Source of the DNA: Tubulanus polymorphus
Taxonomy: Eukaryota > Animalia > Nemertea
DNA: 64,000 nucleotides
Reading direction: 5' to 3'
Assembly (NCBI RefSeq): GCF_964204645.1
Contig: NC_134032.1
Span: 10,466,275-10,530,274 of the forward strand
The translations under genes and the position numbers were made by a program. The notes beneath the pieces are model-generated. The model saw only the letters and a list, made by a program, of their open reading frames with translations. It made no database searches and had not been told where the DNA came from. Positions 17,641 through 43,272 of the stretch are shown here, one piece after another. Position 1 is the first letter of the stretch, and every line of letters starts with the position of its first letter.

Positions 17641-18612
17641 GTTTGGTATTTTGGATTACGTTGTCGTAAGACCAGAACATTACAATTGACACATTAAATT
17701 CATCTGTTGTACTTTTTAATCGCAATTGATTGTGTACAGAATATCGTGTAGTTGTTTATGTCGCTTATGTGCCAGGGTATCCTACGAAACCCATTAAATC
17801 AAAGTCCACAGTTTGACTTGCATAAGAATGCGGATGATAAACAATGATTTGACCACCTAAAGCAAAAAACCATTTCATTATCATTTGACCTGATGAAATT
17901 GAAATTACTTTTTAGTCAAAGATCAATCAATTGCGTTGGTAGGTACCGAGGGACTGAGTAGTATAATCTATTTCTAAAACAAGTTCCATTATTCCCATCG
18001 AGAAGAATCCGTTGTCGACAATAAATAATACAGAAAATCATATAATATCAACGATCAATAAAGTTATTTTAGGTTTGAACATTTATTAATGAATTGAATT
18101 GACCGGCAACCAGTCTAGTCCCGATATATTGATGATGTAGCGCGCATCTTACCAAAATGATTATCAAAATCTTATCAAAATGAATAAAGGGTTCTGATAT
18201 ATATTTAATAACAAAATTAACCTCAAAATTCAAAATTGGGATTGTTATTTCGAAACGCCAATATTGATTACTTTGTGCACATCGACTCACACAGAACCAT
18301 ACCAGAATAAGAATGCATACCAGATAAAAATGTACACAATCATTATTTTTACGGTTTTTACGGCGTCAAAATACTCCGATTCTTTACGTAACGTTTCAAT
18401 AGGAACCTCGCAAATAATTTCAAAGCCTATTGTGGGATCAAGTGGACAATGACACGGTCACGCAAAACTAATACATGTATACGAACCAACGAGAAATGTG
18501 CGCAATTGTTTCGAAAAATTAACAGTTACGACTATGGCTAGGAAACAATAAGGAAGTGACGAATGTATTCAACTATTTTATTGCTTATATGTGCTCTAAG
18601 TATCAAAATTGC

Positions 18613-21600
18613 TTATGACAGTCCTTCGGTTCCTTTATAGCAGACAAATTGTATATTTTCGTCACAGGTGACGTCAGAGATGCGGTTTATCGCTGATTGG
18701 CCACTTCCAACGAGTAAAGCCACGCATGCGTCGTCACCAGGTTTCCCAGTGGCCCAATTCAGGAATTCGACCTGAAATTTGTAGAAAATAAAGAATTATC
18801 AAGAAGTATGATAAATGAAACCGACGGATCGGATTTCAGGTTGAACTCACGTCCCAGGTGTAACCTCCGTTAGGTTTCGACTCGTGGAAACCAATCCAAA
18901 CATCGGACGACGACAACGCTGAAATATTTTTTGAAATAATTTTTTTTCTGAACCAAGGCAGATGCGCAACTGTATAGGTTTAATATGAATGAAAAAAATC
19001 AGTCCCGTAGCTATGTGATCATTTTCTTCTCATGTATAAATTTTACACACTTGGAAAAAGGCATTGATTAAAAGATGGCCGCAAGGCAGCGATAACGGGT
19101 TTTCTGCTTTACAGCATCATTGATATGCAAAGCTTTGGAAGTTATTAGGAATAGAATAGAAATTAAACAAAGTTTTTTGTCGAGGTTTCAAAGAACCTGA
19201 TAGAACTGGTACATTTACTTCAATGACTCATATCAAAATAAAACCGTACAAATTACTTTTGATATGAACAGGCACTATGAGACCATTGAATAAAAGGTAA
19301 CTTGAATTGACGTGTACCGGATTCACAAACCCAAAGCTTATAAAGATGAATTCAGCCCTCGAATCAGAAGAAATATGAAGTAAAATCTGAATAAGGATAA
19401 TGTTGATTCTGCCAAGAGAAATCCTATTACATTGTATAAAAAGCCTACCTTTAACGGCGGTGTTTTCTGCCGGTGTAGTTATATGCACGAGTCCGGTTCC
19501 TCCTAACTGACGACATCTCTTAGAGGCAGACGACCACGACAGCAAATCGTGAATCACTCGATGTCCTTTATTACCGAATCGACTCCACGAACCGTCAGAA
19601 CAAAGCGAACCTATTGATTTAAAAATTAACAACTTAAATACCTCGTGTATATCATAGACGATATTGTGCTTTTTAGGATTTCAATTGAATTGGGTAGATG
19701 GCGCTGAATTGATTGTGTACCCTGGCATTGGCAGACGGCTTTGTGTATAAGGTTGCAGTCCTTAGTGTTCCATAAACCGTCGCTGTGTTTAAGTAATGCG
19801 CATTCGTTTTTATTGGCATCAGTTCCGGGTTTATTCGGCATCCAGTTTGTGTATTGCAGCTATAAAAGAAACACCAGAAAATACCAGACGAGAGATATGG
19901 CGAATGCAATGTTTCCAGGTGGAGCCAGTATCGACATACGAAAGACGGCGGCACAAATTTCTCTCTGAAGTTAGGATTAGTTACTATAACGATGGCCTAT
20001 TGATACCTTCATGATGTTTGAGGATTTTAATGGTTCAGGGTGTTTAAGGTTGTGATATGACGGCCTTCTCATTTTCGATAAACATATGAGCTAATATACA
20101 TTTCGCTTTGTCAACAGATGGTGCATTAACATTAGATTAGATGAGCCTTACTGCCGGTATGCGTCATCGTACGTAGTTCCACCTATTGACGATAAATGGC
20201 GATTACTCGTATAGTTTACCTTTGATGTGTAGCTGCCGTCGCCATTCCGTTTCACCCCAATTAGTGCCTTGTCAATAGACTCACGTTTAAGTTCATCTAA
20301 AATTAAGAGGTAATATTTTATTTTTTCGGAAGCCTACTAACATGGTTCCTTCATCGAGATGACTGGAATTTTCCAACATTTCTTCTCTTCGTTTCAACTT
20401 ATTCAAACACGAGAACAAAATACGTCGGTAGAGTTATGGAGGTCTCCATCTTTTTTTTCGGGTAAACTCACTAGCAATAACAAGAGATTCTGCCTTGTCA
20501 GTAAATACAGCGGGCCACGCTTCGAAATGCGCGCAAACATTGCCGACCAAACTCGGTAAAGTGGCTACCGTCGAAATGATGTAACAATGATTTCCGCCGC
20601 CATGTATCCATCCATTACTGCACGGACCTACAAATGAACGCACTTATTTTGTTAATCTGAAAATGGACTCCGAAAGTGTGGCGCATACACATGCAAAACT
20701 AACGAAGCACAGACAAATATTTTACCAGTTTGACAACGACTTCCCGTGTGTCCCGCAGCGCATGCGCAATGTATATTATTACCGGAAGTAACCGTACACG
20801 AGCCACCGTTTTGACAAGGATTCACGCTACACGGGCCACCTGTCGGCAAAATAGAGAACGAATTAGTCCGGTTCATAAGTTGAATTAACGAACGATGTAA
20901 CGTCTTCACATTTTCTAATTACAACAACTATCTTAATTTAGTAGGAAAGTTGGTCTTAATTATCCTTTTTTCCGTCATTTAGGGATTAATGAAGGAAATA
21001 TAAAAAGCCTACCATGTTCACAGCTCGGTCCATAGTAGTTGTTCTCACAAACACAAGTATGGCCACCACCAAAATCAGTCAGTTTACACGTGCCGTGATT
21101 AGAGCACGTGATTCCCGAACAAAGACCTATCAGTGTGGTAGAGAAAAACACGTGATTCAGGAGTTTCTCGGAAAACAGAGTACATAAAACAGAGTTTACA
21201 AAGATGAGCGGCGTACTTACTGTTTTCGCAATACGTGCCGGAGGTTCCTGTCATGCACATACACGAGGGAATATGCGCTCCCATTAACGTCACTATGACC
21301 GTACACGATCCAAAATTCTTACACGGGCTGTTTACGCACTGAGCTGTATAGAATTATCACGGAGATTGTACGTTAATTCAGAAAAATGGGTCAATTTGGT
21401 CGGTTCGTTGCGGTTAAAGATTTTCAGGTGCATTTACGTAAGGATTTTTTATCTGTTTGTTTTCGTATATAGGCGGCTATCTTGGATCTCGAACGAATTT
21501 GATCATCACGCGAGACTTAGAAAAAATCTATGTTGCGCAAGTCTCGCATCCATTGCTCAGAATCCATAAAGGCTTTAAAAAAAAATCTTACCAGCACAAA

Positions 21601-22488
21601 GAACCCAGTTCCACGGTTCAGAGTTGAGATTTGACTCAAGAATTAAAAAAAACTCAATGAAAATGAACTGACTTTACTCACAGTTAACTCTAACTCTCCG
21701 TTTTGGTGCTGGATTCTGGTCACTTACATTTTACTTGCACTGCTATTCCATTATTGCCGGAAGCACGTGCTGTTGCAATAGAAACGGCGTCAAACATCCG
21801 GCAGGTGGTGCTGGCTGGAACATATTGGTATCCCATACACGACTGGTCGGTATAACAACTACTTTCACATAGCATTGAGTCGAAAAACTGTTCAGACGCG
21901 AAAACCCTAGCATCAGACTTCAAATATACAGTACCGAATCTGACCGCTAGGAAGAAAACAAAAAGAAGACATATCTAAACTAAATCTGTCGATTGCTCAG
22001 AATCTAGGACACATGATGGATTGTGGCCAAATTTCAACCTCTTCTTCCTAAGATCCTCTACACCATGTATAAAAAGTGGTCTGAGTGTCATTGGTGATTT
22101 AGGGAACGAAATGCATGAGATTGGCAAAGAAAATATATAGGCAGGAAATCGATGTAGCTAAACGATATCATAGGAACATTTTTTGGAGCAGCCGTATCTT
22201 CTCTTGAAGACGGACGAGGCAACTTGATGGTGTCATATGGACTCAGAGGCATGCATTTTTGGAAGGTGGAAGAAAATTTCATAATGCCGTGAGGATATTC
22301 ATTTAGGCAATTAATTCGGTGATGCCGTAAGATTTAGGGGATCTATCGATTGAAGTAGTGATCGTCGGGGAAGTGTACACGTAAATGGCATTGGACTCAC
22401 GCGTAGATAGATGTGCAGAAACGTTGATTGTCAACATCGCAACAATGATAATGGTCACGCCGAACGCTAACATGGTCGTCCTCAACAT
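18613..22488 (-). CDS. Secreted PAN + 3xEGF + 2x C-type lectin protein, copy 2
   Basis: Same exon series and splice sites as copy 1; ends CYKGTEGLS-stop. Confidence 0.85.
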
Positions 22489-24530
22489 TATCTAAAAAAC
22501 CGAACCACAAATAGTATTGCAAAATTCATTTCTGTAGACGAGACTGGTTTCCTAAGACTCAAAACGAATAATACTTAAAGCTTTAAGCTTCATTTACAGA
22601 TTTAACAAGACAAATTTACTGCGAGGGTCAAACGTACCTGCATTAGCAATATTGTGAATAGATAAACTTGTTTCGTCTATCAAACCAACAACTCCAAATT
22701 CCACGAGTAGATTCTTCTTCGTTTTTAATGATGAACACCAGCTGGACCGGAAGTCATACATCCCACCTGGTGCATACTTAATGTCTGTATATATATATCA
22801 CATATCTAACTGAAAGATGGTGTCTCCCAATTGAGAAATGACCGCTATCGCCTACGTTGTTTTGATCCAGTTCCTAGAAAATTGGCACTGGACCCAATTC
22901 AACCATACAGTTCCGAGCGTTTAAATGAATTGACCCAGTTTACATTTGCCTTAGTTCAGTTCAACGCTTAGTTTAATTCGTCTCTGAATCTAGTTCCACA
23001 ATTATTGTAGATTGTATTTTACTATGGGCCCAGTTCCACCTCTGTATGGCTTTCATTTGACACTGGGCCTACTTCTACAGTTAAGTGGAACTTCTACAGT
23101 TAAGTGGATTTGAGTTTTTTGAACCCATTTTTACAGTTGTGTGGCTTTGATTCAAATCTGGGTTAAGTTCCACAGTCATATGGCTTTCATTTGACTCTGG
23201 GGCCAGTTCCACGGTTGCTGATGTGGCTCTGGACCAAGTTCTACATTTGCGTTGGTTATATGAGTCTCTGAAACCCGTTGCACAATTGCTTGGGTTCGTT
23301 GACCCCAGTTCTAGTAGTGTAGGTTTAATTTGACTCGTTTATCAAACTCCACCATTGTTTTGTATTTTGACTAGCGTTGTTGTAAGACCAGAACGCTACA
23401 ATTTACACATTAGATTCATCTGTTGTACTTTTTAATCGCAATTTATTTTGTACGGAATATCATAGTGTTGTTTATGTCGCTTATGTGCCGGAGTATCCTA
23501 CGAACCCATTAAATCAAAGTGCACAGTTTGACATGTATAATGTGTACGGATGATAAACGATGACTTGACCACCTGAAGCAATAAACCTTATTATTATCAT
23601 TTCACCTGTGTATGCAGACCATAATGTTTTAATATCAACTTTGTTTAGTTTATCAGCTGGGAATGACGGGGTGATCGCCTGGGCCCAGTAGAGCTGTCCA
23701 ATCTAGTGTCCAATCTGCCCCACCATCTAAGATTTTTGTTCAAGTAACTGTTATTTGTTCGGAAACCTGGCAGTGTCAAGGTCATATTTATTCAAAACAG
23801 TTATAAATCACAGTTGAATGAATGAATGAATATATTTTCTCAAATGTATAATACATAATAACATAGACATTACAATTAGCATACATGATTACTGAATATG
23901 TACATTCAAGCAGGACACCCCCGAGCCCTAAGGGCTGCACCTAATTGGGGGGGGGGGGGTGCTCTCGTATGATTTGATAATTGATAGTTGAAATCTTCAG
24001 AATAAGAAATCTTCAGAGTGTGTTTACTTTTAAATAATTAGGAATTATGTTCGAAATATACACTGCCACGCAACAGCTTACGTCCTTGTTCAGTGCTACA
24101 CACTCACAGGTGCAGTTATGGGAACTTGCCACCCAGGTATGAAACCCGAAACCTATCATATAATAGAAATACATCTTTTAGCATAATGCGATGTAGCTAG
24201 AATTAGTTTTTTAGTCGTTTCAATGCTTTTTTCAAAGATACTTTGCATTTTTACTTAAGAAATTGGTAATCAGCGATTTGCCTCGTTTCGTCTTGACGAC
24301 TTTCGGCAAAATGTGAGGTGGTCGTGAATCTGGTGACTCAAGATCGTCCAAGATCTGGCTCTTGATAATAGTAGGATGTACGGGAGGAGCGCCTACTTTA
24401 TAATAACAAAATCAAATTAAATAGAGATAATTATCATAGCAATGATAACAAAGAAAATAATGATAATGGTAAATATAGCTGCATAGCAGCGATAACGGGT
24501 TTTCTGCACAGTCTTGAATCCTGTTCAACG

Positions 24531-26939: not shown

Positions 26940-29900
26940 TCAATTTCCTCTCGACTTCGGCTTCAGACGGATCACTTTTCGAAAAATGATGCAGCCTATT
27001 CTATGAAACAATTCCTGGCAGCTTCGTGATAACAACTGAAAACAAGAAATGAAAGTGTACGTATAAAGATATCTCTCTCAGTCGTAGGGACACGAACCTG
27101 ATGGACACTCTGTCATCACATCCGCTCAGTATACGGAGACGTAAGAAATATAACGAAAGGGGTCACTACAATCTTTTAGAGCGAAAAATATGTTACGTTA
27201 CCCTTTCAATTTCTCGTGGTTTCATCGTTCTGTCGGTAAACAGCCGTCTGGGTATGCACACGCGGTCGAGGTCATGTGGATCGATATTGATCACGCCGAC
27301 TAAGGTCATCTGAACTTCTTCCAAATCTGAAGAGCAAAAGAAGCATAAATTCATTCCATTCAGTCAACTATTTGGGCGTTTAGAAAAACCAGTAAAAATT
27401 ATTGCATTTCGATGCACATTTCATTTTGACAGGTGTTTTTTAAGAGTTACCAGAATTTCCCACAATCGCGTTTACATCAGTGACATAGGATAAAGTGGAA
27501 ATCGTGTCGTTCTGGAAAATACGCACGTATACAAATAAATGAAAAGCTTTATGCGATGAATTAAAATGATGCCACAACGTTTCAATTCTTAACTAACAGC
27601 CATCATTTTTTATTTGTCTACAGTTTTGATACGAACTAGGGTGTTTTATTCATAAATTAAATCCGAAAGATAAGAACTCATACAGACCACAGTAAAAAGT
27701 TGAAATTTTTGAACCGAAAAACTTATTTTCTCTTAGAATAAGTATTTAGATTAATAAGGTAGGCTTATTGGCACAGTCTAATTAATCAAGGACCACCCTT
27801 TTGTTTACCATGTTAACTTTATTGATATTCAACGCTTGATCTACATCCTCGTAAAGTATATCTCCATAGTCTAACAGAACGTTACTGACTGCAGCTGCAA
27901 GAACCACCGGACCAGGAGTGAGAACATCTTCTTCATTGAACTGTGTAATGAAAACAAGGAATGGAATTAATATTGACTCTTACGGAAAAGTTTCCGCCAA
28001 AACTGACCTTTGTCATTTAATTGAATGTCCCTTGTACGTGTGGACTAGATTACTGTATTCAGCAAATGTCCCTATGATATCATTTGATTATTCCTAAAGA
28101 CCCTTATAGAAAAGATAGCTGCCTCCATAAAATCCCCGAATGACAACATCATATTACCCCTATAGACTATTCAAGAAAAATTGAAATCCCCTATGACATC
28201 ATCCAAATTACTCTTGATGAAATTCTTACGCGGGTGATATTAAAATGATGGCTGTTTATTGCCCGGATGTTGGTGCTCAGCTTCCAAATCTCTGTTGGAC
28301 TAAATGGTTTGACAGATCTATGGACAAAAACCTGAAAAGTAACGAAAAGATTACGTTGGGAGCTCTTAAGTCAACAGAATTACCATGCAAGGTTGTTTTG
28401 TCCCATTTATATTCAAAGTCCAAAAATCGACGAAATCACGATTCAATATTCCTCACCTTGCCAATGCGTTTTGCAATGTCTGGATTTTCACTGACGCAGA
28501 CGGTTCCGTGTTTTGCTGACTGCACTATGAAATCTCGCAGACATTTTACATGCTAAAAACAGTCAAAATCAACTAGAAAATATCGTAACTGATCCCTTTC
28601 AAGACTGCTTTTCATTTGAAAAATGAGATTAACCTAAAGGACTTAGCAGAAATGTGCCGAACATGATGCCCATCTATTGGTTCCCGATGAGCATATAATG
28701 TGATCGATACATGAATGCAAGAGCGCATTTCTGATTGACTAAAAACGATAAAGCCATCTCTAGCCACAATACACAGAAGTTGAAAGAGATGGAAACGTTT
28801 CCCACTGTAAAAGGACGCTGCACAGAATTCATACCTCAGGGTTTCCGACAATCTCTTCGTCACCGCCCGCCTCAAATAAGGGACAGTCTTTCGAGGCAAA
28901 CGCTGTGCGTTTCTCTGCGCTGAATACCACATCTCCTGTTTGGTCTACAATCACGTGATGGGTTGTGACAACCTTATGACCACCTGCAGATACCGTCGTT
29001 GATTTAGTCGCCGTCACTGCTGTAACGGCGCATCTTGCCCTCAGTGTGTCACCGATGTAAACCGGCTTGCGTTGCGTAATTTTGTAGAAACCCAAATGGT
29101 AACTTGCCATTTCGGAAAATCTGCAAAAAATAAAAAGTCGTTTGTCACGAACAAACAAAGGAAATGCTTCCCATTTCAGCTTTGGTATTTATAACTTGTT
29201 CTTGTCCCCAAATACATCTTGGCACTTTTAATGCAGCTTCGCACTCCGGTATCTTTTAACCTGCTCACCTATTTCATCTATATATGGCTCCCTTCCCGGC
29301 GTAAAAACCCGGTTCCCGATGAAACCATCCCTTCCTCATTTATATACGGCTATCCCCTTGGCGGTGCACCTCTTCTTGCTTTGGTATTTGTACCTCTTTC
29401 TCCGTGTAGCCTATCTTTGCAACATTTTTATGGGTCATTAGTCCTCACAATTTCCCCGAATAGCCCCAACCCTTCTGAGACACCAATTGTTCTTACCTAA
29501 TAACCATTAAACCAGCGCACAATCCAGCCAAATGATAAAAATTCACCAGTCGCGATTTCAGACCTAATTTCCGACTGAACGCATCACTAGAATTCACTTT
29601 AAAACCATTGATAAACGACTCTTCCCAAGTTGACGCGCACGATGCGTCAAGTGTCACCTCAAACGGAGAGTGCGTCATCTTGGTTAGTACCCCAGCCATT
29701 CCCGGGAGTAATTCTGTCTGAACAAGTTCATCGCTGTCGTTTTCATCCTCGACTGTCGTAGTTCTTTGCTGCGCTGCCATATCAAGAAGTTTCTGTGCGT
29801 GCTTGACATGCGGTGGTCCAATACCCTGCGCGCTATCGTAGGCCGAGCGTTTGTAGATGTGCATTCTACCATCATCGTTAGGGTTCCAACTTGTGATCGT

Positions 29901-30719
29901 TTGGGCTGATTTCAGATCGTGACCTTTGATCGTCAGTATATCGTTAGCCAGTATCGTCTGCGCCGGCGTTAAAGTACACCTCGTGTAGAACCCAAGTTCT
30001 TTGGCGCGTTTGGTCTGACGTATGAAATGCGAATGGCTCTCAATGTTACAGTCAGCCCCGAATATCGGCGTGATGTTTGCTCGGCGACATGCTCTTACGA
30101 TTTCTATCTGAGCCGATTGGGCCACCTGCTCATCCACGTGCGCCATAGTTTCCGATGCATAGTCATAGTTACCGTGAATCAGAGACACCACACGGTCCGA
30201 ACTGCGCACTATTTGCGCGCAGTTTTCCAAACCTTCAATCGATTCGATCATTCCAACTATTGTCGTCTGGCCGACCTCCATGCCCATCCGCGATTCAATT
30301 CGGTCAATCAGCTCCGCACATCTCCGAACATCGTCACCATTGGTCAATTTAGGAACGACAAAACCGCTCAAGCGTGGATTGACGAGCTCGGTGACGTCAT
30401 GGATCCATGTGGAGTCATCTGCTACCACTTCGTTGATGCGGATGAATATCGGAACCGGACAAACGATACTGTTAACTAGTTCTTTGAAATTTCGCCTGGT
30501 CGTGCTCTTATGGTCTGGGTGGACGCTGTCCTCCAAATCGAGAACGACACAATCCGCTTGCAAAAGCCACAACTTCTCATCGGTTAGACGTTCTTTTTTG
30601 ACGAATTGAAACGTTCTCGGTAGATTATTACTGAAGGCGGTGGTTGAGCGACACCTGGCGATGACCGATGCATTTGCCGCGGATTTAAAACCGAAAGTCA
30701 CCGAATATCGCAGCAACAT
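26940..30719 (-). CDS. CitE/malyl-CoA-lyase-family domain fused to mesaconyl-CoA-hydratase-like double hot-dog (MaoC) domain, copy 1 (8 coding exons, 706 aa)
   Basis: Exons 30719-29497, 29120-28835, 28552-28457, 28331-28230, 27940-27809, 27511-27451, 27326-27202, 27035-26940 (2121 nt, in frame). Lyase motifs DLEDSV, IRIN, VPK, IES, GNYD; hot-dog motifs SSDAFSRKLGL, HLGF, KPVYIGDTL, HHFN, PGPVVL. Confidence 0.85.
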
Positions 30720-31024
30720 CTGAAATTGGACAATGAAAGATTTATGGGTTAATTCCTAGACCTGACATGGCGTGGCATTTGGCATTGGCACCACATGAAC
30801 TGCTGCAGTGTTAATCAGGAACAACCTTAAAAATCACACTCAATTTATCAAGGGCACTGATGTATGGTTTGTGGATCAAGCTCTCACGCCTCCTATCCTC
30901 TAGCAATATTTTGCTTGTGTATATTTTCCGCCTGCTAACTCTCCGATTCATGAGAGTTCCCAGATAGGTATGTTTGATCCAGTTTATAACGATGTTGTAA
31001 TGTACTGTCACAACAATTACATCC

Positions 31025-31285
31025 TGGAGTTCGGCGATTTTAATTCTCGTATTTTCACTCTAAAGGATTTTATTCATGCTAGTGAAAACTCACCTGTAGA
31101 CCATACTGTTTCGGATTCCAGTTTTGAAAAAAAACACCGATAAAAAAGGCTCCTTTGGAAAAAACTCATTGATTCATACGCTGTTTGTAATCTAAGAATT
31201 ATAAACGGTAGAACTATAGGCGATGACAACATACAATGAAACGTACAATGGTTTCAGCGCCGTTGATTTCTTTATTTGCAGCAAT
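31025..31285 (+). mobile_element. Decayed LINE apurinic-endonuclease domain fragment
   Basis: GDFNSR ... GKKLID...NLRIINGRTIGD ... NGFSAVDFFICS motifs. Confidence 0.7.
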
Positions 31286-31915
31286 TTAGAATAAACCGAT
31301 CAGATACATCTGATGGGGAATAAACGAGCTTAACGTCGTAAGTGCTTTCGAATCCCTGGAAACAGAAATCGAAGAGTACAACATAGGCGTCCCCAGGACC
31401 CCCTAAGGACGCCCATGCAAACAGATGACACAATCAGTTTGGACTCAAGCTCTCTGCTAGAAAAATGTACGAATAGCGAAACTCCGAATGTCATGTCATA
31501 ATCTTAAAATGGAAAAATGAAGGAAACGTGGCATCGATCAATCAAATGGTATCTGCCCACACTGTATAGTCATTGGCGTTGAAACTCATTTCGTCTTATA
31601 CTGCAAACTTAAAGATAACCTAAGAATTAAATATAACATTATTAATTTACACCTAGATACTTTTCATTCGACCTACATCCATCCTAGCAAACTAATTTTC
31701 TTAGATATTGCGCAATTTATATATCATTGACTTGTAAATATCAAGTAAAGAATATTGTATGTATATCAGATATTAAATGCCTTCTTCTTTTCCTTTATCG
31801 CTTTATAATTGATCCTTTTTCAATCACATACTTTTTATTTATGACGAATAAAATGAATTTGAAATTTCAATTGTCTAGTGTAGCCGTTATTCCCCAAATA
31901 CGGAGCCCGTAACAG

Positions 31916-32208
31916 CAGGGGTGGATCCAGAGCTTATATTGAGGGGTAGTACCCGATGAAAAGGGCAATGATTATTAAGAAATGCGCTATCCACGAGTAG
32001 CGAAAAGGGGTCTGTTTGCCCTTTTGCAGGAAAATTTTGAAAAATAAGCCCCTGCAGATGCCATTCCCAAGTATTTGAGCTAGTTTCAACCACAGAAAAA
32101 TGCAATAAGAGCCTTTAGATGTCTTCGGATGGTACTGAATTTTCGGGGGCCAACTGAAAGTTTAGAGGGTTGCACGTGCCCCAGGGGCTACCCTCTGGAT
32201 CCTCGCCT
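31916..32208. mobile_element. MITE with CAGGG-type termini (hAT-like)
   Basis: CAGGGGTGGATCCAGAG ... CTCTGGATCCTCGCCTG imperfect TIRs. Confidence 0.6.
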
Positions 32209-32619
32209 GTAACAACGTCTGGTATTCCGACTATATCATGCATACACTCAGTAGATGCTAGATACAAGAAGATTGCAGATTCAACGGGAAAGAAACAGAA
32301 ATTATAAATTCATGAGATTCGATATAAGTTTTTAATTGAAATAATGGATATACGAGAGACTTCAGACTTGGCAAACTGTCCAAAAATTTTTACAGAAAAT
32401 TGCGTTTCGGTGACAATTCCTTTTTCTAGTTGAACGCTAGTTAAGTGTATATATTGTTATGCGGCCCGAAGAAGGAACCGAAATATCGTGGGAGAGCGTA
32501 TCCTTCCTCAGCTCCGCACAACGACACAAATTGAAATTGACCCGAGACCAAAAATAAATAAACGACTAAGATGTATATACTTCGGATTCTAAATACTCAC
32601 AACTATTTATTATATCAGT

Positions 32620-34290
32620 TCCGTCTTCCCTATGTATCGACACCTTTTACAATTTCTGTTTCTAGTTTCTTACGGTTGTCCTTTCCCTCTTGGTTTCCCA
32701 GGTGCTCTCCCACTAGTTCAGCTATGTCTCTTAGTTTTATACTATCAAAAATTTGGTTTCCAAGGAACTATTCTCGTGACCAACGCCACCGCATTTGGGG
32801 AGGGCCGACGACCAACCTCGGGACCTGATTCGCCCACCAGGCCCCCAAGAATTAATGTTCTTAGCAACCTGGTTAAGAAACAAGCCCGGAGTTGTCTCGG
32901 TTTCCAAACATGTAGACGTGGACACTTGACTAATCCCTTAGGATTTTTTATTATTGTCTTGAAAACTAACTCCAAAATATTTCTTATTAATCGAGACATA
33001 AACTGAACCAGTAACAAAGGCAAATAACATTAACTGATGGTAATGCCAAAACTTGCCCGTTTATGAATTTCTAGTAAACAATAACAAATATACATTGAAA
33101 AACCGTTATAATGCCATCATTTTTAATGCCACCGCTCACTGTCTTAACGCCAGCATTTTTCAGAGAATAAATTTGCGCAATCTAACTCAATTTCATTGAA
33201 AATGCCATTCGTTTATAACAGTGCCGTTATAACGGACTTTGGCTGTTAATACTTCAAGGATGCAGTAAAATAATAAGCAGTAATAAACTTGTTGTTTTCA
33301 AGTTAAACGATTCAGTAAACGTGATTGTTACTCAAATGTTACCTCAGAAAAGAACTCGTGCTGATCAGCAAGAAATTCAATTGATCAAATAAGTTGCAAG
33401 TATAAGGCGTATGCTATATACGTATGTCCCCGGCCGTGCTAAGGCATAGACTATATAACAGCAACCGCTTTCACTGGAGTGATCTCGTCTGATTCATTTG
33501 TTGCGGTCACGAGTCATCGCCAACCTGTTACGCACGGGCGGGGATTTTAGACGGTACATATATAAGTGTTTTCTTGAAATGTATATATAATGATAATCTT
33601 GTGGAAAAAGAGATTTTGATTACATTTCATGTATTGTAAGCATGCCTGCTTGCTTTATGTCGTTCGGATCTTGGTTTCCCAAGACTAAAACCCTGATTAT
33701 TCATTATTGCTTTGTCTATATATTTTACCGACCAGTTTTTTTAGGTGTTTCTATGAATTGTTTGACCAAATTACCAAAATAACCCAGAAATAAATATATA
33801 AGTCAACTACTGAATACAAATCCCGACAAATACTCATAATCCTTCATTTTGTTTATTATGAGTTTCCTATCTCTGTCGACACCTTACAATATCTGTCACA
33901 ACGTAAGTTTCTTCATAAATTATGACTAGCTTTCTTGGGTGGGTTTTCCTGATCTTTTCCCAGAGCGCTCTCCCGGAGCGCCCCCTTGCTCACCGGCTAG
34001 TTCAGCTATGTCTCTTATTTTCATACTATTAAAAGTCAGTATCCGAGGAATTATTCTCGTGACCAACGCCGCCACATTTGGGAAGGGCCGACGAGACCAA
34101 CCCCGGAACCGTATTCGCCCATCAAGCCACAAGAACTAATATTCTTAGAAACTTGGTGGCGAAATGAGCCCGGAGTTGTCTTGGTTCCCAGACATGTAAA
34201 CATTGCAACTCGAATAATCCCAGGATTTTTACTAATTGTCCCGAAAACCTAAATCCAAATTGTTTATCAGAGACCAGTAAAAAAGCGAAT
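32620..34290. repeat. Two diverged direct copies (~400 bp; ~32620-33020 and ~33850-34290) of an unclassified repeat
   Basis: Shared ctagttcagctatgtctctt, attctcgtgaccaacgcc and agcccggagttgtct blocks. Confidence 0.7.
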
Positions 34291-35049
34291 AAATATCAAG
34301 CACAATGAGTTGTATGTGTTATGAACAACTGCTATAGATTTATGCATGTTTATATAGATATCAAAAATTGCTTATCATAACAATATAAACATGTTTATTG
34401 TCAATACATCTGTGTCTATGCAGACTATGACATTTCAGTATCAAATCCATATTCCTAACCGGTTGGGGTGAGTTGCACAGACAAGTTTAGAATTGAGACC
34501 AGTCTAAGACCATGAGCTCTATAATAAACAATCCAAGAACTTCTCACCAGTCTTGTGATTTAAGACCACCTCCGCACTTAAATCAGGCGCGTTCGAACGG
34601 GCCCGGGCGGTAGTGATGGCCACGACTGTGAAGCCATGGAGGATTCTGAACCTTCTTCGACTTATATATAAATCGCCCATTTAGACCACTTGACACTGAA
34701 AATTGCAGTCGAAAATATATCCTGGTGGGTGCGATTTATGGTGAGAATTTGTAACGCTGAGGTTATTTCAAATATTCTATGTTCAGTGCATCCAGGCATT
34801 GATGCAGTTATAAATAAAAATTCGAAAATTGTATTATAATACATTTTTGGTGTGTTTATTGAGTGATCAGTTGAGTGCAAACGAGCAATAAAACCATCTC
34901 GCGACATATGAGACTTGTTGATACCGAAATATTATTTCAGTAAAAGCAATAAAAACTGGCATAAACTTTGTATATAAGTTCGAAGTATCAATTGGTTTCG
35001 AGTTTGACTGCTATCGAGGTAAGTGGAAGGTTAGAATATTGGTTTTAAT

Positions 35050-35370
35050 AGCTGGCGGTGTGGTTCGAGCGTTCGGCTATCGGAAGGCAGGTCATAGTTT
35101 CGAACCCCGTACATAACCGACTGTGTCCCCGGCCAAGACACTTTATCTTCATTGCCTCACTTCACCCGGGAAATAAGACGGGTACCTGGCCTGATAGATG
35201 GTGACTCCTGAACACCGCACCTAGTAGTTGCTCGGGTATGTTACTTCTCCCCAAGGAGAGATGACTGATATATGGTTAGAGTAATAGGCTGGGGGTAATA
35301 CATGTAATACCAATTGGAAAGCACATTTCAACATTGTATCACAGTGAAAAGGGCGCTATAGAAATAAGAT
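35050..35370 (+). mobile_element. tRNA-derived SINE in the first (5'UTR) intron of the toxin-like gene
   Basis: A-box-like tggcggtgtggt, B-box-like gtttcgaaccc, CORE-like tgtgtccccggccaagacact, followed by cacccggg...gggtacc. Confidence 0.65.
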
Positions 35371-35682
35371 TACTTGATATTTAGAACATCAATCATTTTT
35401 ATTAAAAGTAACTGACATGGAGTGATGTTCTTTTCAATTTACTTCTCTTTGCGAAAGGGGAAACTAACTGTCAATCGCGATTTAAATCCGATTCGTTGCA
35501 ATTCCAGAATAAATTCAACACTAATAATCAAGCATTTCTGATTTTTAGTATAAAGCTTTTACATCCGAAGAATGTTGCAGTTACTTGGCAAAAAAAGTTT
35601 GGACAGGTTTTTTTTCTGTATTTGCGTTCAAGATTTTAGGTTAAATTGACTGAATCAAATTTAGGAAGCAAACGACTTAACA

Positions 35683-36963
35683 ATGACGGGGCTACTCGGA
35701 AATAGGAAAGTGATTGGACGGCTGAGCGTCATAGCTCTGATTCTGCATTCGATTATCTGGGCCAATGCCAAGGACGTTGCCGCGCAGCAGGTGAGTTTCA
35801 GGCCCCAGTTGCTCAGTTCTGTCCAGAGGTAGTAAATATCAAGATTGGCTTTATGACTAAGTTAGTAATTAGATTGATCTTAAATCAAAGCCATCGCTGT
35901 GCAACTGGCTCCAGCAGTTTTGCAAGTTGGTATGAATTCAGAATCTTTCAAAATAAAAAGCCTTACGTACATCTTGCAGAAAATACAACAAGTGGCTTCT
36001 TTATTTCAGTCCAAAGGCGACGCCGCGCACTCACTAACTGAAAGGGCGCTGAACGCGGATATTAAAGGCTTTTTAGAACAGGCACTTGGAAGAGGTAACG
36101 TAACCATACACCAGCCACATGCTCGTGTAACCATTACTGGGGTTCGTTGCTAGCTAATGTATACCCCGGGCCCGGTTTTATAGACTGGTATTACCTTTAA
36201 CCGGGAGGCTAACTCAATTGATAATGAATTAAGTTAGCCCCGGGTTAAAGTTAATACTAGTCTATAAAACCGGGCCCTGGTGAATACCATAATGACAAAT
36301 GATTTTGAAACTCGGCACAACCATAGCAAAATTGATTGATGATACATGTATGATGAAAATGAACTGAAAACCTGAAGGGGTTTCGACGAGATTGCTAGGT
36401 TGCGGGTTCAATCTGCCAATTCCTATCTTCGTAGGAAATCAGCTCGATCTTACCATCAGACAAAGATTCATTCCACTAGCTTGATTTATTTTCTATTTTC
36501 AACAGACGAAAGACATGCGCTGTTTAAGCGGCGACTCACCGCGGACTTCAAAGGCAAGCATTTCATGACAACGTCCACATTCCACAGCCTGGGAACTCGA
36601 CAGCGAAATTGGGATAATGAAATGACCGCGCGGCTGCGGTACTATCGTCGAGATCCTAATGTCATTTCATTGATAGTAGCAAATAACGATGCCCGATTAC
36701 AGACCGATATAGCGCGCCCGGCAAATACGGTTCCCGGTGGACATGGCAATCTGTATCGCGCAAGCAACAGTTACCGCGTATACGACGCGTCGATCCGGGT
36801 TAGGATACAGCACGGTAGGAAACGAGCCACGGTGACCAGTCTGATCGATCGAGGATTGGTGAATTTGATTTTGGGTCATAAAACATCGAGTATGGGCATT
36901 ACGATGCACTACGACCGCATCGATGGCGCAAGAGGCAACACACGAATTCACCTGCATCCGTAA
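35683..36963 (+). CDS. Secreted prepro-protein (216 aa) with cationic Ntox50-like (bacterial polymorphic-toxin RNase-like) mature domain; exons 35683-35790, 36010-36094, 36506-36963
   Basis: Canonical GT-AG junctions, phases 0 and 1, in frame; signal peptide ending WANA|K; dibasic site LFKR|R; TATA at ~34971 and a non-coding exon donor at ~35018; AATAAA at ~37018 and ~37038. The domain call comes from motif recall only. Confidence 0.8.
36169..36276. mobile_element. Short palindromic MITE (Harbinger-like, CWG-type flanks)
   Basis: GGCCCGGTTTTATAGACT ... AGTCTATAAAACCGGGCC; nearly the whole element is a hairpin. Confidence 0.8.
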
Positions 36964-37134
36964 TGGGGAAGGTGTCCACCGAATCTGGACAATTCAATTC
37001 ACCGAAATATCCAATTCAATAAAAATCAACCGACTGAAATAAAACTAATATTAGCATGTATACTCTTTTTAATTTTCTTCTGTATATCAACATGACACCG
37101 GAAGAGCTCTGGACAACGGGTTATCTTTTGTGCA

Positions 37135-40100
37135 TCAATTTCCTCCCGTATTCGGCTTCAGACGGATCACTTTTCGGAAAATGATGCAGCCTATTCTATG
37201 AAACAATTCGGGGCAGCTTCGTGATAACAACTGAAAACAAGAAATGAACATGCACGTATAAAAAGGTCTGTCTTGGTAGTAGAGATCCGAACTTGATTGG
37301 CACTCTGTCATCACATCCGGTCAGTATAATAAACACGTGAGAGATATAACCAAGCAGGGGGCGCTGCAAATTTTTCAGCACAAAAAAAATGTGTTACCCT
37401 TTCAATTTCTCGTGGTTTCATCGCTCTGTCGGTAAAGAGCCGCCTGGGTATGCGCACGCGATCGAGGTCATGTGGATCGATATTGATGACGCCGACTAAG
37501 GTCATTTGAACTTCTTCCAAATCTGGAGAGCACAAGAAACATCAATCAATGATCTGGCCGATAAATCGAACCCTAAAGTTACGAATTTCGATATATATTC
37601 CCTTTCTCGGTTAAGGCTGTTTTTAAGTCTTACCAGTATTATCTGCAATCGTATTCATGCCAGTGACACAAGAAATAGTTGATATTGTGTCATTCTGGAA
37701 AATACATAAACGAAAAAGTTTATGAAATTTATAAAAATGAAGCCACAACGTCTCAGTTCTTGACTAAGAGTCATCGTATTTCATTTGCTGACACGGCCTA
37801 TTGAACCAGTCTATATTGAACCAAAAGTCTGTCATTTCATTTATTACCAAGTTAACTTTATTAATATTCAGCGCTTGATCTACTTCCTCGTAGAGTATAT
37901 CACCATAATCTAACAGAACGTTACTGGCTGTAGATGCCAGAACCACTGGACCAGGGGTTAGAACATCTTCTTCGTTGAACTGAGTAAAAGAATACAAAGA
38001 ATTGAAATAATATTGACTCTTACGTACAAAATTGCTCCAGAATTCCCTTTTGACATCAAATTGTCCCTTGGCATGTCTAAGAGATTGCTTTAATCAGCAC
38101 ATACCCATTCGACATGATCCGATAAGTCTATAAGGCCCTTCGATAAAAGATGGCTGCTTTTAGAAAACTTATGTCATCCAAGTTACTCCTATAGATCCTT
38201 CCAAGAAAATGGGCCGACTCCATAAATCCCCCTATGACATCATCGAATTACCCCTAGACTTACCCGGATGGTGTTGAAATGATGGCTGTTAATTGCCCGG
38301 AGGTTGGTGCCTAGCTTCCACACCTCGGTTGAACTGAATGGTCTTACAAATCTATGAACGAAAACCTGCAAAAATAACCATAAAATTGCGTCGGAAGCAA
38401 AATTAAGTCTTGACAATTACCGTGCGAGGTAATTTAGTCCTATTTTGTTATTTCAACATTCGAAAAAGTCAGATATTCCTCACCTTGCCAATGCGCTTTG
38501 CAATGTCTGGATTATGACTGTCGCGGACGGTTCTGTGTTTTGCTGACTTCACTATCAATTCACGCAGACATTTCACATGCTATAAAACAGTCAAACGCAA
38601 CTAAAAGACGGTGCAGGGATTGATCCCTTTCAAGACGGCTATTCATTTGCAAAATTAAATTAACGTAGGTCTTAGCAAGCACATCGAGTAAAACTCGCTG
38701 ATTTGTCTAAAACAATGAAGCGAAACCCCGCCAGGTGTATAGGATTAGAGCGTTGCAAAGCTTTCCAACTGGGGTATGACACACTGCTTAATTTATACCT
38801 GAAGTTTTCCTACAATCCCTTTGTCACCACCAGCCTCAAATAAGGGACAGTCTTTCTGTGCAAACGCTGTGCGTTTCTCCGCGCTGAATACAACATCTCC
38901 CGCTTGGTCTACAATCACGTGCTCAGTCGTGACCACCTTACGACCCTCGTCGGATACCGCAGACGATTTAGTGTCAGTCACCGCTGTAACGGCGCATCTT
39001 GCTTTCAGTGTGTCGCCGATGTAAACCGGCTTGTGTTGCGTAATATTGTAGAAACCTAAATGGTAACTTGCCATTTCGGAAAATCTGTAAGAAAAACAAA
39101 ATGAAGCTTGGCAAAAACGAACAAAGGAAATGCTCCTCATTCTAACTTCGGTATTTATGTATCGTTCTAATTCACCCGAATCATCTAGCCCCAACCCTCC
39201 GAGACACCAGCCGAGACACCACAATGTTCTTACCTAATAACCAAAAGACCAGCGCACAATCCAGCCAGATGATAAAAATTCGCCAGTCGCGATTTCAGAC
39301 CTAATTTCCGACTGAAAGCATCACTAGAATTCACTTTAAAACCATTGATAAACGACTCTTCCCAAGTTGACGCGCACGATGCGTCAAGTGTCACCTCAAA
39401 CGGAGAGTGCGTCACCTTGGTTAGTGCCCCAGCCATTCCCGGGAGAAATTCTGCCTGAACAAGTTCATCGCTGTCGTTTTCATCCTCGACTGTCGTAGTT
39501 CTTTGCTGCGCTGCCATATCAAGAAGGTTCTGAGCGTGCTTGACATGCGGTGGTCCAATACCCTGCGCGCTATCGTAGGCCGAGCGTTTGTAGATGTGCA
39601 TTCTACCATCATCGTTCGGGTTCCAACTTGTGATCGTTTGGGCTGATTTCAGATCGTGACCTTTGATCGTCAGTATATCGTTAGCCAGTATCGTCTGCGC
39701 CGGCGTTAAAGTACACCTCGTGTAGAACCCAAGTTCTTTGGCGCGTTTGGTCTGACGTATGAAATGCGAATGACTCTCCATGTTACAGTCGGCCCCGAAT
39801 ATCGGCGTTATGTTTGCTCGGCGACATGCTTTTACGATTTCTATCTGAGCTGCTTGGGCCACAAGCTCATCCACGGGAGCCATAGTTTCCGATGCATAGT
39901 CGTAACTACCGTGAAACAGAGACACTACTCGGTCCGAGCTGCGCACTATTTGCGCGCAGTTTTCCAAGCCTTCAATCGATTCGATTATCCCAACTATTTT
40001 CGTCTGACCAACTTCCATACCCATCTGCGATTCAATCCGGCCAATCAGGTTCGCGCATCTCCGAACCTCGTCGCCATTGGTCAATTTAGGAACTAAAAAA

Positions 40101-40456
40101 CCGCTCACGCGTGGATTGACGAGCTCGGTGACGTCATCGATCCACGTGGAATCGTCTGCTACCATTTCATTGATGCGGATGAATATCGGAACCGGACACA
40201 CGATACTGTTAACTAGTTCTTTGAAATTTCGCCTGGTCGTGCTCTTGTGGTCTGGGTGGACGCTGTCCTCCAAATCGAGAACGACACAATCCGCTTGCAG
40301 GAGCCGCAAGTTCTCGTCGGTTAAACATTCTTTTTTGACGAATTGAAATGTTCTCGGTAAATAACCGCCGAAGGCGTTGGTTGAGCGACACCTGGCGATG
40401 ACTGATGCAGTTGCCACGAATTTACTGTGGAAATTCGCTACACATCGAAGCAGCAT
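37135..40456 (-). CDS. CitE-family lyase / mesaconyl-CoA-hydratase-like fusion, copy 2 (8 coding exons, 706 aa)
   Basis: Exons 40456-39234, 39084-38799, 38579-38484, 38365-38264, 37979-37848, 37694-37634, 37522-37398, 37230-37135; exon lengths identical to copy 1. Confidence 0.85.
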
Positions 40457-41945
40457 CTGAAATTGGACAATTAACGAATCATCAAATGAAATACTCACGA
40501 GCACGTAGATTTGTTTGTAAAGTTATTTCAGTTATTTTTCGACAACCAGTTTAGCCCCATTATATTGTTGACGTATATCGCTTGCGAGGGGTATTGCTCA
40601 CCGAACCCAGCTCTCGCCAGCCTTCTGAACTTATTCTTAAAGGCTGGCTTATGTCGACAAGCAACGCGACGCCTACCGAAGCAACTGAGTTTATCGCCGG
40701 TTAGCGGCAATAGCGGCCTACGAGAGGCCGCAAGATGCTGCTCTATCGGTTCGACCTAAATCAAACACTCTGGTAGTAGAAATGTATCTCTTGAATATCA
40801 TCTAGGATGATATGCAAGCGATACAGATACCTTATTATCTGGACCTTATTATTAAAGGCTGGCTTATGTCGACAAGCAACGCGACGCCTACCGAAGCTAC
40901 TGGGTTTATCGCCGATTTAGGGGCAATACCTCTTGCATATCATCTAGGGATGATATGCAAGCGATACAGATACAGAAATATACAGAAATTACAATATTCA
41001 TCACGCGCATATGTATTTTCTTGAAGTTATTGATCTACACAAGAGATTTTTATAGACAATTATTTTGGCAAATTGTTCCAGACAACAGGTGAAGCAATAA
41101 CACAACAGAAAATTTGTTTCGGTGGTCATAAATCTACCAATGCGCAAAGAATTCCAGTATCTACGTAGTTGCAAGCGAGTGTCCATACTTCATACACTCT
41201 GTTACGGTATAAATGACGACATTTCATTCACGTGATCTTACTGCGATGATTCAGTGCAATTTGCATAGTTGCGAATGATGACATTCTCTTCCTTAATACA
41301 TAGCCTTCTCATTCTCAAAGCATACAATTCAGTAAGCGTGAACTCGAGTGTTACCTTCTGATGATTAATCTTGGTGATCAGCTAGCTGAAATTCAAGTTA
41401 CCGTTCTAGTTATGCCCTTCTAGTTCCGCATACCGATAAAGTAACGATGTATGGTTTTCTCGCCTATTCATTTCGCGCAAACAAATGTTGCAGACAGTCA
41501 TCGCACACCTGTCACACGGTGCGCGGGATTCCACTACGGACAAGTAAATCGGCTAAGGTTTATTCAATCTAGGGCATATATGGAGGGGTAGCACCTGCTG
41601 ATGAAAAAAGCACTGCAAAGGAGTCACAACCAAAAAGGAAACCAGAACACATAGGCCTATTTCCTCTATGTTAAACCTGTATATATTTCTACTTTATATT
41701 GCTCTATTTTATCCAATTCTTTGAAAAAAAATAATCAGATTTGTGCTGTCCTATAATTTATTACTGTTATACCGAGGATATGCTTCGTATTCTATAATAA
41801 GGTGTAATAAAGTTATTTTGAATTGGATTGGACTCCTGGCAAGCGGGGGTGACTTCGGTTATAAAAATACATATTTCTCAAGGACGTAGACTATGCCGTA
41901 AACAAACTGAACGAAACTCAAACTTAAATAGTCTAGTACCTATCC

Positions 41946-42110: not shown

Positions 42111-43272
42111 ATGATCGATCAGTTCACCGAGATGGACCCGAAACATATTTTCGTGCGTGAATTCGAGAAAGACGACGGCTCTATTTTAAAAATCAACCAG
42201 TACGAAATAGGCGATGTAGGCTGCGTCGTGTGGGACGCGGCTTTAGTTCTCAGTTCGTTCTTAGAAACCGGTAATCTACGTAAATACTACGCCGATAAAC
42301 CGCTATCCACGTGCACGGTCATCGAGCTCGGTGCTGGAACTGGAATTGTCGGATTAGAATTAGCTTCGCTCGGGTAATTATCGTTTAATCGATCATTATA
42401 GATAGATCATTAACCCCCAATGACATCATCATCACCAGCCTCAACACCATTCAGATTCCTGGAAGTATGCATCAGCATGGTCTATGGGGCACTTCGGTGA
42501 TGTCATAGGAAGACGCTAATAGGTGATGTCATAGGGTGATTTATGGAGGCAGCTATCTTCACAATGCTCTTTTAAGTCACCTCCATCCCTACTGTCAGGT
42601 TATTTCCATTTTAGAGCGAACGTCATTGTAACGGATTTAGAGGAATTTGTGCCTTTGCTGAAAATGAACGTCGACGCAAATGAAAACTTGCTCGCTGCGG
42701 GTAGCGCTGCAGTGCGAACACTAAAATGGGGCCAAGACTTGAGTCCGGAATTCGAGAGACCCGATTTAATTTTCATGGCCGACTGTATCTACTATGAAGA
42801 GGTCAGAAAAACATTACTTTTTCAATTAAAAATATTTTCTGAAAAGATTGCGCGGATTTTGAGGTTTAAAATTTCAGATACTTGTAACCATTCTTTATTT
42901 TCAGTCGCTTGAGCCCCTCGTGAAAACCATCAAAGATCTTTGTCGCGCTGACACTTGCGTTTTCTGCTGCTTCGAGCAACGAACTACCGGAAATAAACCC
43001 GAGTTGGAACGCAGGTTTTTAGAGGTAAGTTTTACCAGCAGGTTTTCACAATGTACATCTCAATACAAACACCCCCGATACGCCGCCATACTATCTATAC
43101 CGCTAAAATCGTTCTGCACCGATGTGGGCGGTATATCGGGGGTTGACTGTAGTTTTAATTTTTTTTTCAGCTTATTGGAGAGAATTTTACGATAGACACG
43201 ATTCCGCATCGCGATCATCATGTCAATTTTACCAGTTCTGATATTCAAATATTGAAATTCTCACCGACTTGA
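42111..43272 (+). CDS. VCPKMT: Protein-lysine methyltransferase METTL21D/VCP-KMT (4 exons: 42111-42373, 42615-42801, 42905-43024, 43171-43272)
   Basis: GDVGCVVWDAALVL, ELGAGTG, VTDL, LKWG, ADCIYYEE and EQRTTGNKPELE motifs; in-frame splicing; start could instead be the ATG at 42132. Confidence 0.9.

What the first reader, a model, noticed from the sequence alone, without database searches (positions are those of the whole stretch)
26940..40456. Intron-containing, probably mitochondrial fusion of a CitE/Mcl-type lyase and a mesaconyl-CoA-hydratase-like domain in an animal
Seen in sequence: two intact 706-aa genes with an Arg/Ser/Ala-rich N-terminus lacking acidic residues (presequence-like), a CitE-family TIM-barrel domain, an acidic linker (EDENDSDE) and a double hot-dog region. 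Established knowledge: animal CLYBL is a stand-alone CitE-family enzyme. The hot-dog part (SSDAFSRKLGL...HLGF...KPVYIGDTLRA) parallels bacterial mesaconyl-CoA hydratase Mch (recalled as SSDEFARACGL...NLGY...KPVFPGDTLRA). Mch and beta-methylmalyl-CoA lyase Mcl catalyse consecutive steps (mesaconyl-CoA to methylmalyl-CoA to glyoxylate + propionyl-CoA) in the ethylmalonyl-CoA pathway, 3-hydroxypropionate bicycle and methylaspartate cycle. An analogous MaoC + CitE pair degrades itaconate. Inference: a bifunctional C5-dicarboxylate (mesaconate/itaconate) metabolising enzyme not part of textbook animal metabolism, possibly of bacterial origin. Consistent with that, the whole lyase domain sits in one 1223-nt exon.
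Basis: partly seen in the sequence, partly recalled or inferred. Interest (0 to 1): 0.87.

Follow-up and report, generated by a model that had tools for sequence, protein, structure and literature searches.

The report
Ancient lyase-hydratase fusion of invertebrate mitochondria
A ribbon worm has two copies of a gene that joins two bacterial-type enzymes for small dicarboxylic acyl-CoAs; the fusion is old, shared with amphioxus, brachiopods, sea anemones, sponges, protists and some bacteria, appears undescribed, and lacks a catalytic residue thought universal in its enzyme family.

Summary
Observation confirmed: two intact 8-exon, 706-aa genes (87% identical, dN/dS 0.28). Copy B equals a RefSeq 'uncharacterized protein' of the nemertean Tubulanus polymorphus, and a public contig splices all seven introns. 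The N-half is a CitE-family barrel, the C-half a mesaconyl-CoA-hydratase (Mch)-type double hot-dog (Z 34 to Mch, 19 to HSD17B4). It is not CLYBL: an ordinary CLYBL lies on another contig. The hint of recent bacterial origin fails: about 55 full-length relatives exist (amphioxus, Lingula, anemones, sponges, a foraminifer, bacteria), and amphioxus has introns at all seven Tubulanus sites (six exactly aligned). New here: the lid aspartate reported as conserved across the CitE superfamily is glycine in 41 of 46 fusions, while the Mg ligands and catalytic Arg are invariant. Stand-alone lyases with this glycine lie beside a MaoC hydratase in 10 of 10 bacterial loci, mostly in amino-sugar acylation clusters. 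Best reading: a mitochondrial enzyme coupling hydration of a dicarboxylic enoyl-CoA to aldol cleavage or synthesis; substrate and direction untested. No paper on it was found; the scan had not noted it elsewhere in this genome.

The parts
29497..30719 (-). Copy A exon 1 (aa 1-407): presequence-like leader, CitE-type barrel with lid, acidic linker, start of hot-dog 1
26940..29120 (-). Copy A exons 2-8 (29120-28835, 28552-28457, 28331-28230, 27940-27809, 27511-27451, 27326-27202, 27035-26940): rest of the double hot-dog domain and stop
   Evidence: all GT-AG, frame intact
39234..40456 (-). Copy B exon 1 (aa 1-407), same content as copy A exon 1; the ATG follows an acceptor-like sequence conserved in both copies
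37135..39084 (-). Copy B exons 2-8 (39084-38799, 38579-38484, 38365-38264, 37979-37848, 37694-37634, 37522-37398, 37230-37135)
   Evidence: splice joints seen in run X5
40367..40456 (-). Copy B aa 1-30: Arg/Ser/Ala-rich leader without acidic residues, low model confidence, fast evolving (putative mitochondrial presequence); copy A 30630-30719
   Evidence: no targeting predictor available
39497..40366 (-). Copy B aa 31-320: CitE-family TIM barrel and lid; D61, E63, D64, R94, E159, D186 kept; lid Asp replaced by G301 (codon starts 39556), H304 (39547); copy A 29760-30629
37150..39436 (-). Copy B aa 341-702: Mch-type double hot-dog; S410, K478, H539, E549, H564, G579 match Mch sites; Mch Asn226 site is A559; copy A 26955-29699
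39257..39756 (-). Tract of exon 1 (nt 701-1200) with only 10 differences in 500 nt between the copies, against 4-14% in nt 101-700 and 6-31% in exons 2-8: probable gene conversion

Best explanation
An old, vertically inherited, probably mitochondrial two-domain enzyme of an unnamed family. The Mch-type half adds or removes water at C2=C3 of a short enoyl-CoA with a terminal carboxylate (fumaryl- or mesaconyl-CoA type), using His564 with Ser410 and Lys478 holding the carboxylate. The CitE-type half binds the resulting 3-hydroxy-3-carboxyacyl-CoA (malyl- or citramalyl-CoA more likely than methylmalyl-CoA in this species) on Mg2+ through Glu159 and Asp186 and cleaves or forms the C-C bond with Arg94, giving an acyl-CoA plus glyoxylate or pyruvate; His304 or water stands in for the missing lid Asp. 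Likely role: clearing C4/C5 dicarboxylyl-CoA side products or dietary acids, with glyoxylate going to the malate synthase this genome has. Shown: gene, splicing, folds, residues, distribution, age. Inferred: location, activity, substrate, direction.
For: Folds: Z 34.4 to Chloroflexus 4E3E and 32.6 to Mcl 5UGR; family profile matches full-length Mch at E 1e-24 and 8e-22. D61, D64, R94, E159, D186 invariant in 46 fusions. Mch carboxylate and catalytic sites (PMC10164722) map to S410, K478, H564, G579. Gly-lid lyases lie within two genes of a MaoC hydratase in 10 of 10 loci; an annotated mch-citE pair also occurs unfused. Purifying selection in both halves. Presequence-like N-termini in eukaryotic, mostly not in bacterial members. 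Malate synthase exons found, isocitrate lyase not.
Against: The lid Asp is the proposed acid/base and is called conserved in the whole superfamily (PMC3832036); CLYBL D320A is used as a catalytic null (bioRxiv 2024.09.25.614871). His304 is kept in only 28 of 46 fusions and is Met/Leu/Ile in stand-alone Gly-lid lyases. Mch Asn226 is not kept in the animal proteins. Bacterial members sit in biosynthetic, not catabolic, neighbourhoods. No upstream pathway for mesaconyl-CoA or itaconate was found in the genome. Identity to any characterised enzyme is 25% or less by structure.
Confidence: 0.5

Rival explanations
1. The Gly-lid barrel is a decarboxylative aldol synthase: it makes the enolate from malonyl- or methylmalonyl-CoA by CO2 loss, so no lid base is needed and the Gly leaves room for the carboxylate; the hot-dog half then dehydrates the product. 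The enzyme would run one way, making malyl/fumaryl- or methylmalyl/mesaconyl-CoA as acyl donors.
For: Asp-to-Gly change marks a clade (SH-aLRT 93) with all barrel residues intact. Stand-alone members lie with a NeuD-type acyltransferase (9 of 10 loci) and an amino-sugar aminotransferase (8 of 10); N-malyl amino sugars are known from marine bacteria (PMC3210612). Fusions lie beside an NRPS with SbnA/SbnB, or a CADD-like oxidase and thioesterase. One locus has an acyl-CoA carboxyltransferase next door.
Against: Pure inference from one residue and gene context; the carboxyltransferase occurs in 1 of 10 loci; no link between these loci and a known polysaccharide structure was made; no acceptor is known in animal mitochondria.
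Confidence: 0.22
2. The barrel does thioester chemistry rather than C-C cleavage (like the malyl-CoA thioesterase Mcl2 or the repair activity of CLYBL): hydratase plus thioesterase would turn fumaryl-/mesaconyl-CoA into free malate or citramalate and recover CoA.
For: The only reported exception at the lid position (Glu) is the thioesterase clade, which has His three residues later like His304. [quoted passage not shown]
Against: The Glu-lid enzymes branch among Asp-lid lyases, apart from the Gly-lid clade; in bacteria a thioesterase would destroy the acyl donor the neighbours seem to need; an intact CLYBL already exists.
Confidence: 0.13
3. One half is a pseudo-enzyme (binding or scaffold role) and only the other is active.
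For: Each half lacks one residue held catalytic in its closest characterised relative; in five bacterial loci a second CitE-like gene lies beside the Gly-lid one, four with a Glu lid; stand-alone versions of the hot-dog half with presequence-like leaders exist.
Against: Mg ligands, Arg94, His539 invariant in 46 of 46; the Asn seems shifted rather than lost (559 in 11 proteins, 561 in 31, never both).
Confidence: 0.1
4. Recent horizontal transfer, contamination, or a chimera of animal CLYBL and HSD17B4.
For: Long first exon; bacterial relatives at about 30% identity.
Against: Spliced transcript; introns at all 7 sites in amphioxus; groups with Lingula (88/89); CLYBL is a separate gene with Asp lid and other intron sites; Z to HSD17B4 hydratase only 18.6.
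Confidence: 0.02

Closest known systems
Malyl-CoA/beta-methylmalyl-CoA lyase Mcl (PDB 4L9Y, 5UGR, 4L7Z)
   Same: CitE-type barrel and lid, Mg ligands, catalytic Arg; best sequence hit among solved structures (E 1.7e-15)
   Different: Lid Asp is Gly; Ala167 site is Tyr; fused to a hydratase; about 24% identity; far below family cut-off
Mesaconyl-CoA hydratase Mch/MeaC (PDB 4E3E, 8HGN)
   Same: Double hot-dog of the same layout (Z 34.4, 329 residues); Ser79, Arg142 (as Lys), His231, Gly249 sites kept
   Different: 14-16% identity; Asn226 site is Ala; separate clade on a very long branch; Mch is stand-alone
Animal CLYBL (PDB 5VXC)
   Same: Same fold (Z 32.1), mitochondrial leader, same organism group
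   Different: Separate gene in this genome with Asp lid; no shared intron sites; no hydratase domain
RipB/Ich plus RipC/Ccl itaconate degradation pair; Rv2499c-type MaoC plus Rv2498c
   Same: MaoC-type hydratase acting with a CitE-type lyase
   Different: Separate genes; RipB is a single hot-dog, Pseudomonas Ich scores only Z 18.2; scores 23 of 340 and 96 of 375 bits
Other CitE-MaoC fusions (P0142; a mostly diatom cluster in the ESM Atlas)
   Same: Same two superfamilies in one chain
   Different: P0142 has a single hot-dog and an Asp lid; apparently an independent fusion

Membership tests
CitE-like superfamily (PF03328) | TIM barrel with C-terminal lid | tested here: met
   PF03328 96 bits; Z 29-33 to Mcl, CLYBL, RipC
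CitE-like superfamily (PF03328) | Mg-binding Glu and Asp, water-binding Glu-Asp, catalytic Arg | tested here: met
   E159, D186, E63, D64, R94 in both copies; invariant or nearly so in 46 fusions
CitE-like superfamily (PF03328) | Catalytic lid Asp (Mcl D299/D318, CLYBL D320) | tested here: not met
   G301 aligns with it by profile and by end register of the structural alignment to 5VXC and 5UGR; Gly in 41 of 46
Mcl | Ala before the Mg-binding Asp, admitting propionyl-CoA | tested here: not met
   Tyr185 in both copies; Ala in 22 of 46 relatives
Mcl / RipC-Ccl / CitE equivalogs | NCBIfam curated cut-off | tested here: not met
   NF041626 36/500, NF038242 96/375, TIGR01588 86/443 bits
CLYBL orthologues | Orthology: stand-alone gene, shared introns, Asp lid | tested here: not met
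   A separate intron-rich CLYBL-like gene with Asp lid at G000:C1:9.256 Mb; its exon borders do not match amphioxus fusion introns. CLYBL itself was not placed in the tree.
Mch (PF19315, NF041625) | Double hot-dog fold of Mch layout | tested here: met
   Z 34.4, rmsd 3.1 over 329 residues to 4E3E; Foldseek top hit
Mch (PF19315, NF041625) | Carboxylate site Ser79/Arg142 and His231, Gly249 | tested here: met
   S410, K478 (conservative), H564, G579
Mch (PF19315, NF041625) | Asn226 of the Asn-x4-His pair; family HMM cut-off; placement inside Mch | tested here: not met
   A559; NF041625 14/560 bits, no PF19315 hit for P0001; separate clade, support 100
HSD17B4/MFE-2 hydratase 2 | Asp-x4-His motif, close structural match, peroxisomal signal | tested here: not met
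   No Asp at 559; Z 18.6-20.1; no SKL-type end
Mch + Mcl function | Converts mesaconyl-CoA to glyoxylate plus propionyl-CoA | not testable with these tools
   needs enzyme assay
Mitochondrial matrix proteins | Cleavable presequence and import | tested here: inconclusive
   Composition fits in about 20 eukaryote-type members and mostly not in bacterial ones; no predictor or import data

The most novel reading that the evidence does not exclude
Gly-lid CitE enzymes are a mechanistically distinct class (for example decarboxylative aldol synthases using malonyl- or methylmalonyl-CoA), used by bacteria to make dicarboxylyl-CoA acyl donors, and many invertebrates have kept the fused form in mitochondria as a route to or from fumaryl/mesaconyl-type CoA esters that textbook animal metabolism lacks.
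Probability: 0.2. Interest if true: 0.85.

Novelty: new variant of a known kind. Interest (0 to 1): 0.62.

Why it matters
It points to a step of mitochondrial acyl-CoA metabolism present in sponges, cnidarians, lophotrochozoans and amphioxus that is absent from textbook (vertebrate-based) pathways and is mis-annotated in databases (the amphioxus protein is labelled CLYBL). It also defines a CitE subfamily that breaks the rule that the lid Asp is universal, with a clear bacterial gene module (MaoC, Gly-lid lyase, sugar acyltransferase) that could explain how N-malyl and related groups on surface polysaccharides are made. Both are directly testable with one recombinant protein.

Tried and rejected
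Recent gene transfer: rejected by shared introns. Two separate genes: rejected, the domain junction is inside exon 1 and a transcript joins all exons. CLYBL or HSD17B4 origin: rejected. Part of a complete ethylmalonyl-CoA or methylaspartate pathway: no Ccr over cut-off, no methylaspartate ammonia-lyase, one mutase locus only; these exon-wise searches cannot prove absence. Endogenous itaconate: no PrpD/IRG1 match. His304 as a universal substitute for the Asp: weakened. Word-based protein searches missed most of the family; the search for related loci gave one bacterial locus and nothing for the sponge query. A scan of 401 genomes around a Pseudomonas MAG used too strict a threshold and shows nothing. 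No full-length fusion in the plasmid collection; no E. coli match for the polysaccharide module. Five paper searches aimed at the fusion or module found no description; the original CLYBL structure paper was not held. Simple orthology of all animal copies: not established; a cnidarian-plus-bilaterian clade is rejected (p-AU 0.0003).
Full report
Observation. The window holds two tandem minus-strand genes, copy A 30719-26940 and copy B 40456-37135. Each has eight coding exons of the same lengths and seven GT-AG introns, giving 706 aa without internal stop. Copy B is identical to RefSeq protein P0001 of the nemertean Tubulanus polymorphus. The copies are 87% identical in protein, dS 0.24, dN/dS 0.28 (0.19 in the lyase, 0.25-0.29 in exons 2-8, 0.85 in the leader), with a nearly identical tract in exon 1 that suggests gene conversion. 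Only these two copies were found in the genome. In run X5, a 2014 data set from another study, one 980-nt contig skips all seven introns at the predicted sites and is B-like; a second, exon-only contig carries five A-type letters, a weak sign that copy A is transcribed too. Contigs do not show level or strand.

How the sequence was searched. My own joined exon model was not sent to any search tool; that step was left out. Exons were searched by reference, the joined coding sequence was used only inside a script to count stops and substitutions, and full-length searches used the public record P0001 by its id after one search returned it. Joined copy A and the joined CLYBL gene were therefore not searched or placed in trees.

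Anatomy. AlphaFold gives pLDDT 87.7 with a poorly modelled first 26 residues, a barrel with lid (about 31-320), a loose linker and a double hot-dog (about 341-702). The barrel matches malyl-CoA lyases, CLYBL and RipC about equally (Z 29-33). The C-half matches Chloroflexus 4E3E (Z 34.4, 329 residues) and Rv0216 (30.3), far ahead of MFE-2/HSD17B4 hydratase (18.6-20.1) and Pseudomonas Ich (18.2); Foldseek and the family profile also rank 4E3E and MeaC 8HGN first for that half. That 4E3E is the Chloroflexus Mch rests on my knowledge and its likeness to 8HGN; the entry says only 'MaoC domain protein dehydratase'.

Distribution and age. A full HMMER search returned about 55 clusters of 650-950 aa aligning over both domains at 24-35% identity. 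The amphioxus gene has ten introns; six match Tubulanus introns exactly in aligned position and phase, the seventh has the same phase five residues away in a gappy linker, and three more lie in the region that is one exon in Tubulanus. The fusion was thus an intron-bearing gene in the protostome-deuterostome ancestor, and the long exon says nothing about transfer. Tubulanus groups with Lingula (88/89); sponges and anemones form another clade (100/99); all eight named animals together have only 71/91, and cnidarians plus bilaterians is rejected (p-AU 0.0003; long branches are a caveat). Several proteins of the sponge-cnidarian clade were called as single long ORFs on large contigs, so they may lack introns (DNA not examined). 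Old paralogy or two ancient acquisitions remain open. An ordinary intron-rich CLYBL-like gene with an Asp lid lies on contig C1 and shares no intron site with the amphioxus fusion.

Active sites. In 46 fusions D61, D64, R94, E159 and D186 are invariant; these are the Mg, water and Arg sites of Mcl (PMC3832036). The lid Asp, which that paper calls conserved across the superfamily except for Glu in the Mcl2 thioesterase clade, is Gly in 41 of 46, in an I-G-P-P-H motif; the structural alignments to CLYBL and 5UGR end in the register that puts G301 on their Asp. His304 is present in 28 of 46 and in six of the eight named animal proteins. The Ala that admits propionyl-CoA in Mcl is Tyr185 in both Tubulanus copies, which argues against methylmalyl-CoA here. 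In the hot-dog half the MeaC sites Ser79, Arg142, His231 and Gly249 (PMC10164722) map to S410, K478, H564 and G579, and the Mch His-Glu pair before them to invariant H539 and E549; Asn226 maps to A559. Eleven mostly bacterial members keep Asn there, while 31 have Asn at 561 instead. The domain forms its own clade far from Mch.

Bacterial context. Stand-alone lyases with the Gly lid group with the fusions (SH-aLRT 93, quick tree). They occur in 8 of 401 genomes of the phylum of a Flavobacteriia MAG. In all ten loci examined a 152-158-aa MaoC with an Asn-x4-His motif lies within two genes; nine have a NeuD-type acyltransferase, eight a DegT aminotransferase, three an asparagine-synthase-like gene, five a second CitE-like gene, one an acyl-CoA carboxyltransferase. 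N-malyl amino sugars are known in marine bacterial polysaccharides (PMC3210612), but I did not tie any locus to a structure. Bacterial fusions lie next to an NRPS with SbnA/SbnB, or with CADD-like oxidase, thioesterase and Sua5/YrdC genes, or cupin and TauD genes; some carry Sua5/YrdC or cNMP domains. So the two domains are functionally coupled, and in bacteria the setting looks biosynthetic.

Mechanism. Both halves point to a short acyl-CoA with a free carboxylate, and MaoC-type hydratases give the stereoisomer that CitE-type lyases take (established knowledge). I give 0.5 to coupled hydration and reversible aldol cleavage with His304 or water replacing the Asp, 0.22 to a one-way decarboxylative synthesis from (methyl)malonyl-CoA, 0.13 to hydratase plus thioesterase, 0.1 to one inactive half. 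The genome has malate synthase exons and one methylmalonyl-CoA mutase, while isocitrate lyase, methylaspartate ammonia-lyase, Ccr and PrpD/IRG1 were not found, so a clean-up role feeding glyoxylate or pyruvate back fits better than a full bacterial pathway. None of this chemistry was measured.

Verdict. Real, expressed and old; works like Mch (or Ich) plus Mcl (or Ccl) but fails the membership tests of each. No paper describing the fusion or the Gly-lid subfamily was found in the open library, which lacks most subscription journals; the ESM Atlas has unnamed clusters of it. Less startling than a fresh bacterial gene in one animal, but a broader and testable gap in animal metabolism and CitE enzymology: new variant of a known kind, interest 0.62.

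Noticed in passing
window 36400-36963 (+): 187-aa open frame between the two copies, on the opposite strand; no Pfam match. An earlier scan note proposes an Ntox50-like RNase gene here; not tested further.
   Followed up: partly
window 1628-12333: Tandem cluster of at least five intronless 312-aa seven-transmembrane receptor genes (Srw/Srx-like).
   Followed up: partly
window 12906-23608: A duplicated multi-exon unit about 5.5 kb apart with C-type-lectin-like exons.
   Followed up: no
window 42111-42377 (+) and 49098-49448 (-): Exon of a lysine methyltransferase (PF10294) and exon of an MBOAT acyltransferase; ordinary animal neighbours.
   Followed up: partly
window 40440-40480 and 30700-30740: In both copies the start codon directly follows a conserved acceptor-like sequence, implying an unseen upstream exon, probably non-coding.
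   Followed up: no
L055, L057, L079-L086: Recurrent bacterial module: MaoC, Gly-lid CitE lyase, often a second CitE-like gene with Glu lid, NeuD-type acyltransferase and DegT aminotransferase in surface-polysaccharide loci; candidate source of malyl-type N-acyl groups.
   Followed up: partly
L013 5715-18010: Bacterial cluster with SbnA, SbnB, MatE, the fusion and a two-module NRPS: candidate for an N-dicarboxylyl-diaminopropionate peptide.
   Followed up: partly
L023 3675-13901 and L020: Conserved Marinobacter/Pseudomonas cluster: ABC transporter, second HpcH-like gene, nitroreductase, the fusion, CADD-like oxidase, thioesterase, Sua5/YrdC; other members have Sua5/YrdC fused to the enzyme.
   Followed up: partly
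P0079, P0080, P0097, P0128, P0149: Stand-alone version of the hot-dog half with presequence-like leaders, resembling a mostly diatom cluster of the ESM Atlas.
   Followed up: partly
G000:C5:3226569-3228050: Intron-containing malate synthase gene; no isocitrate lyase found.
   Followed up: partly
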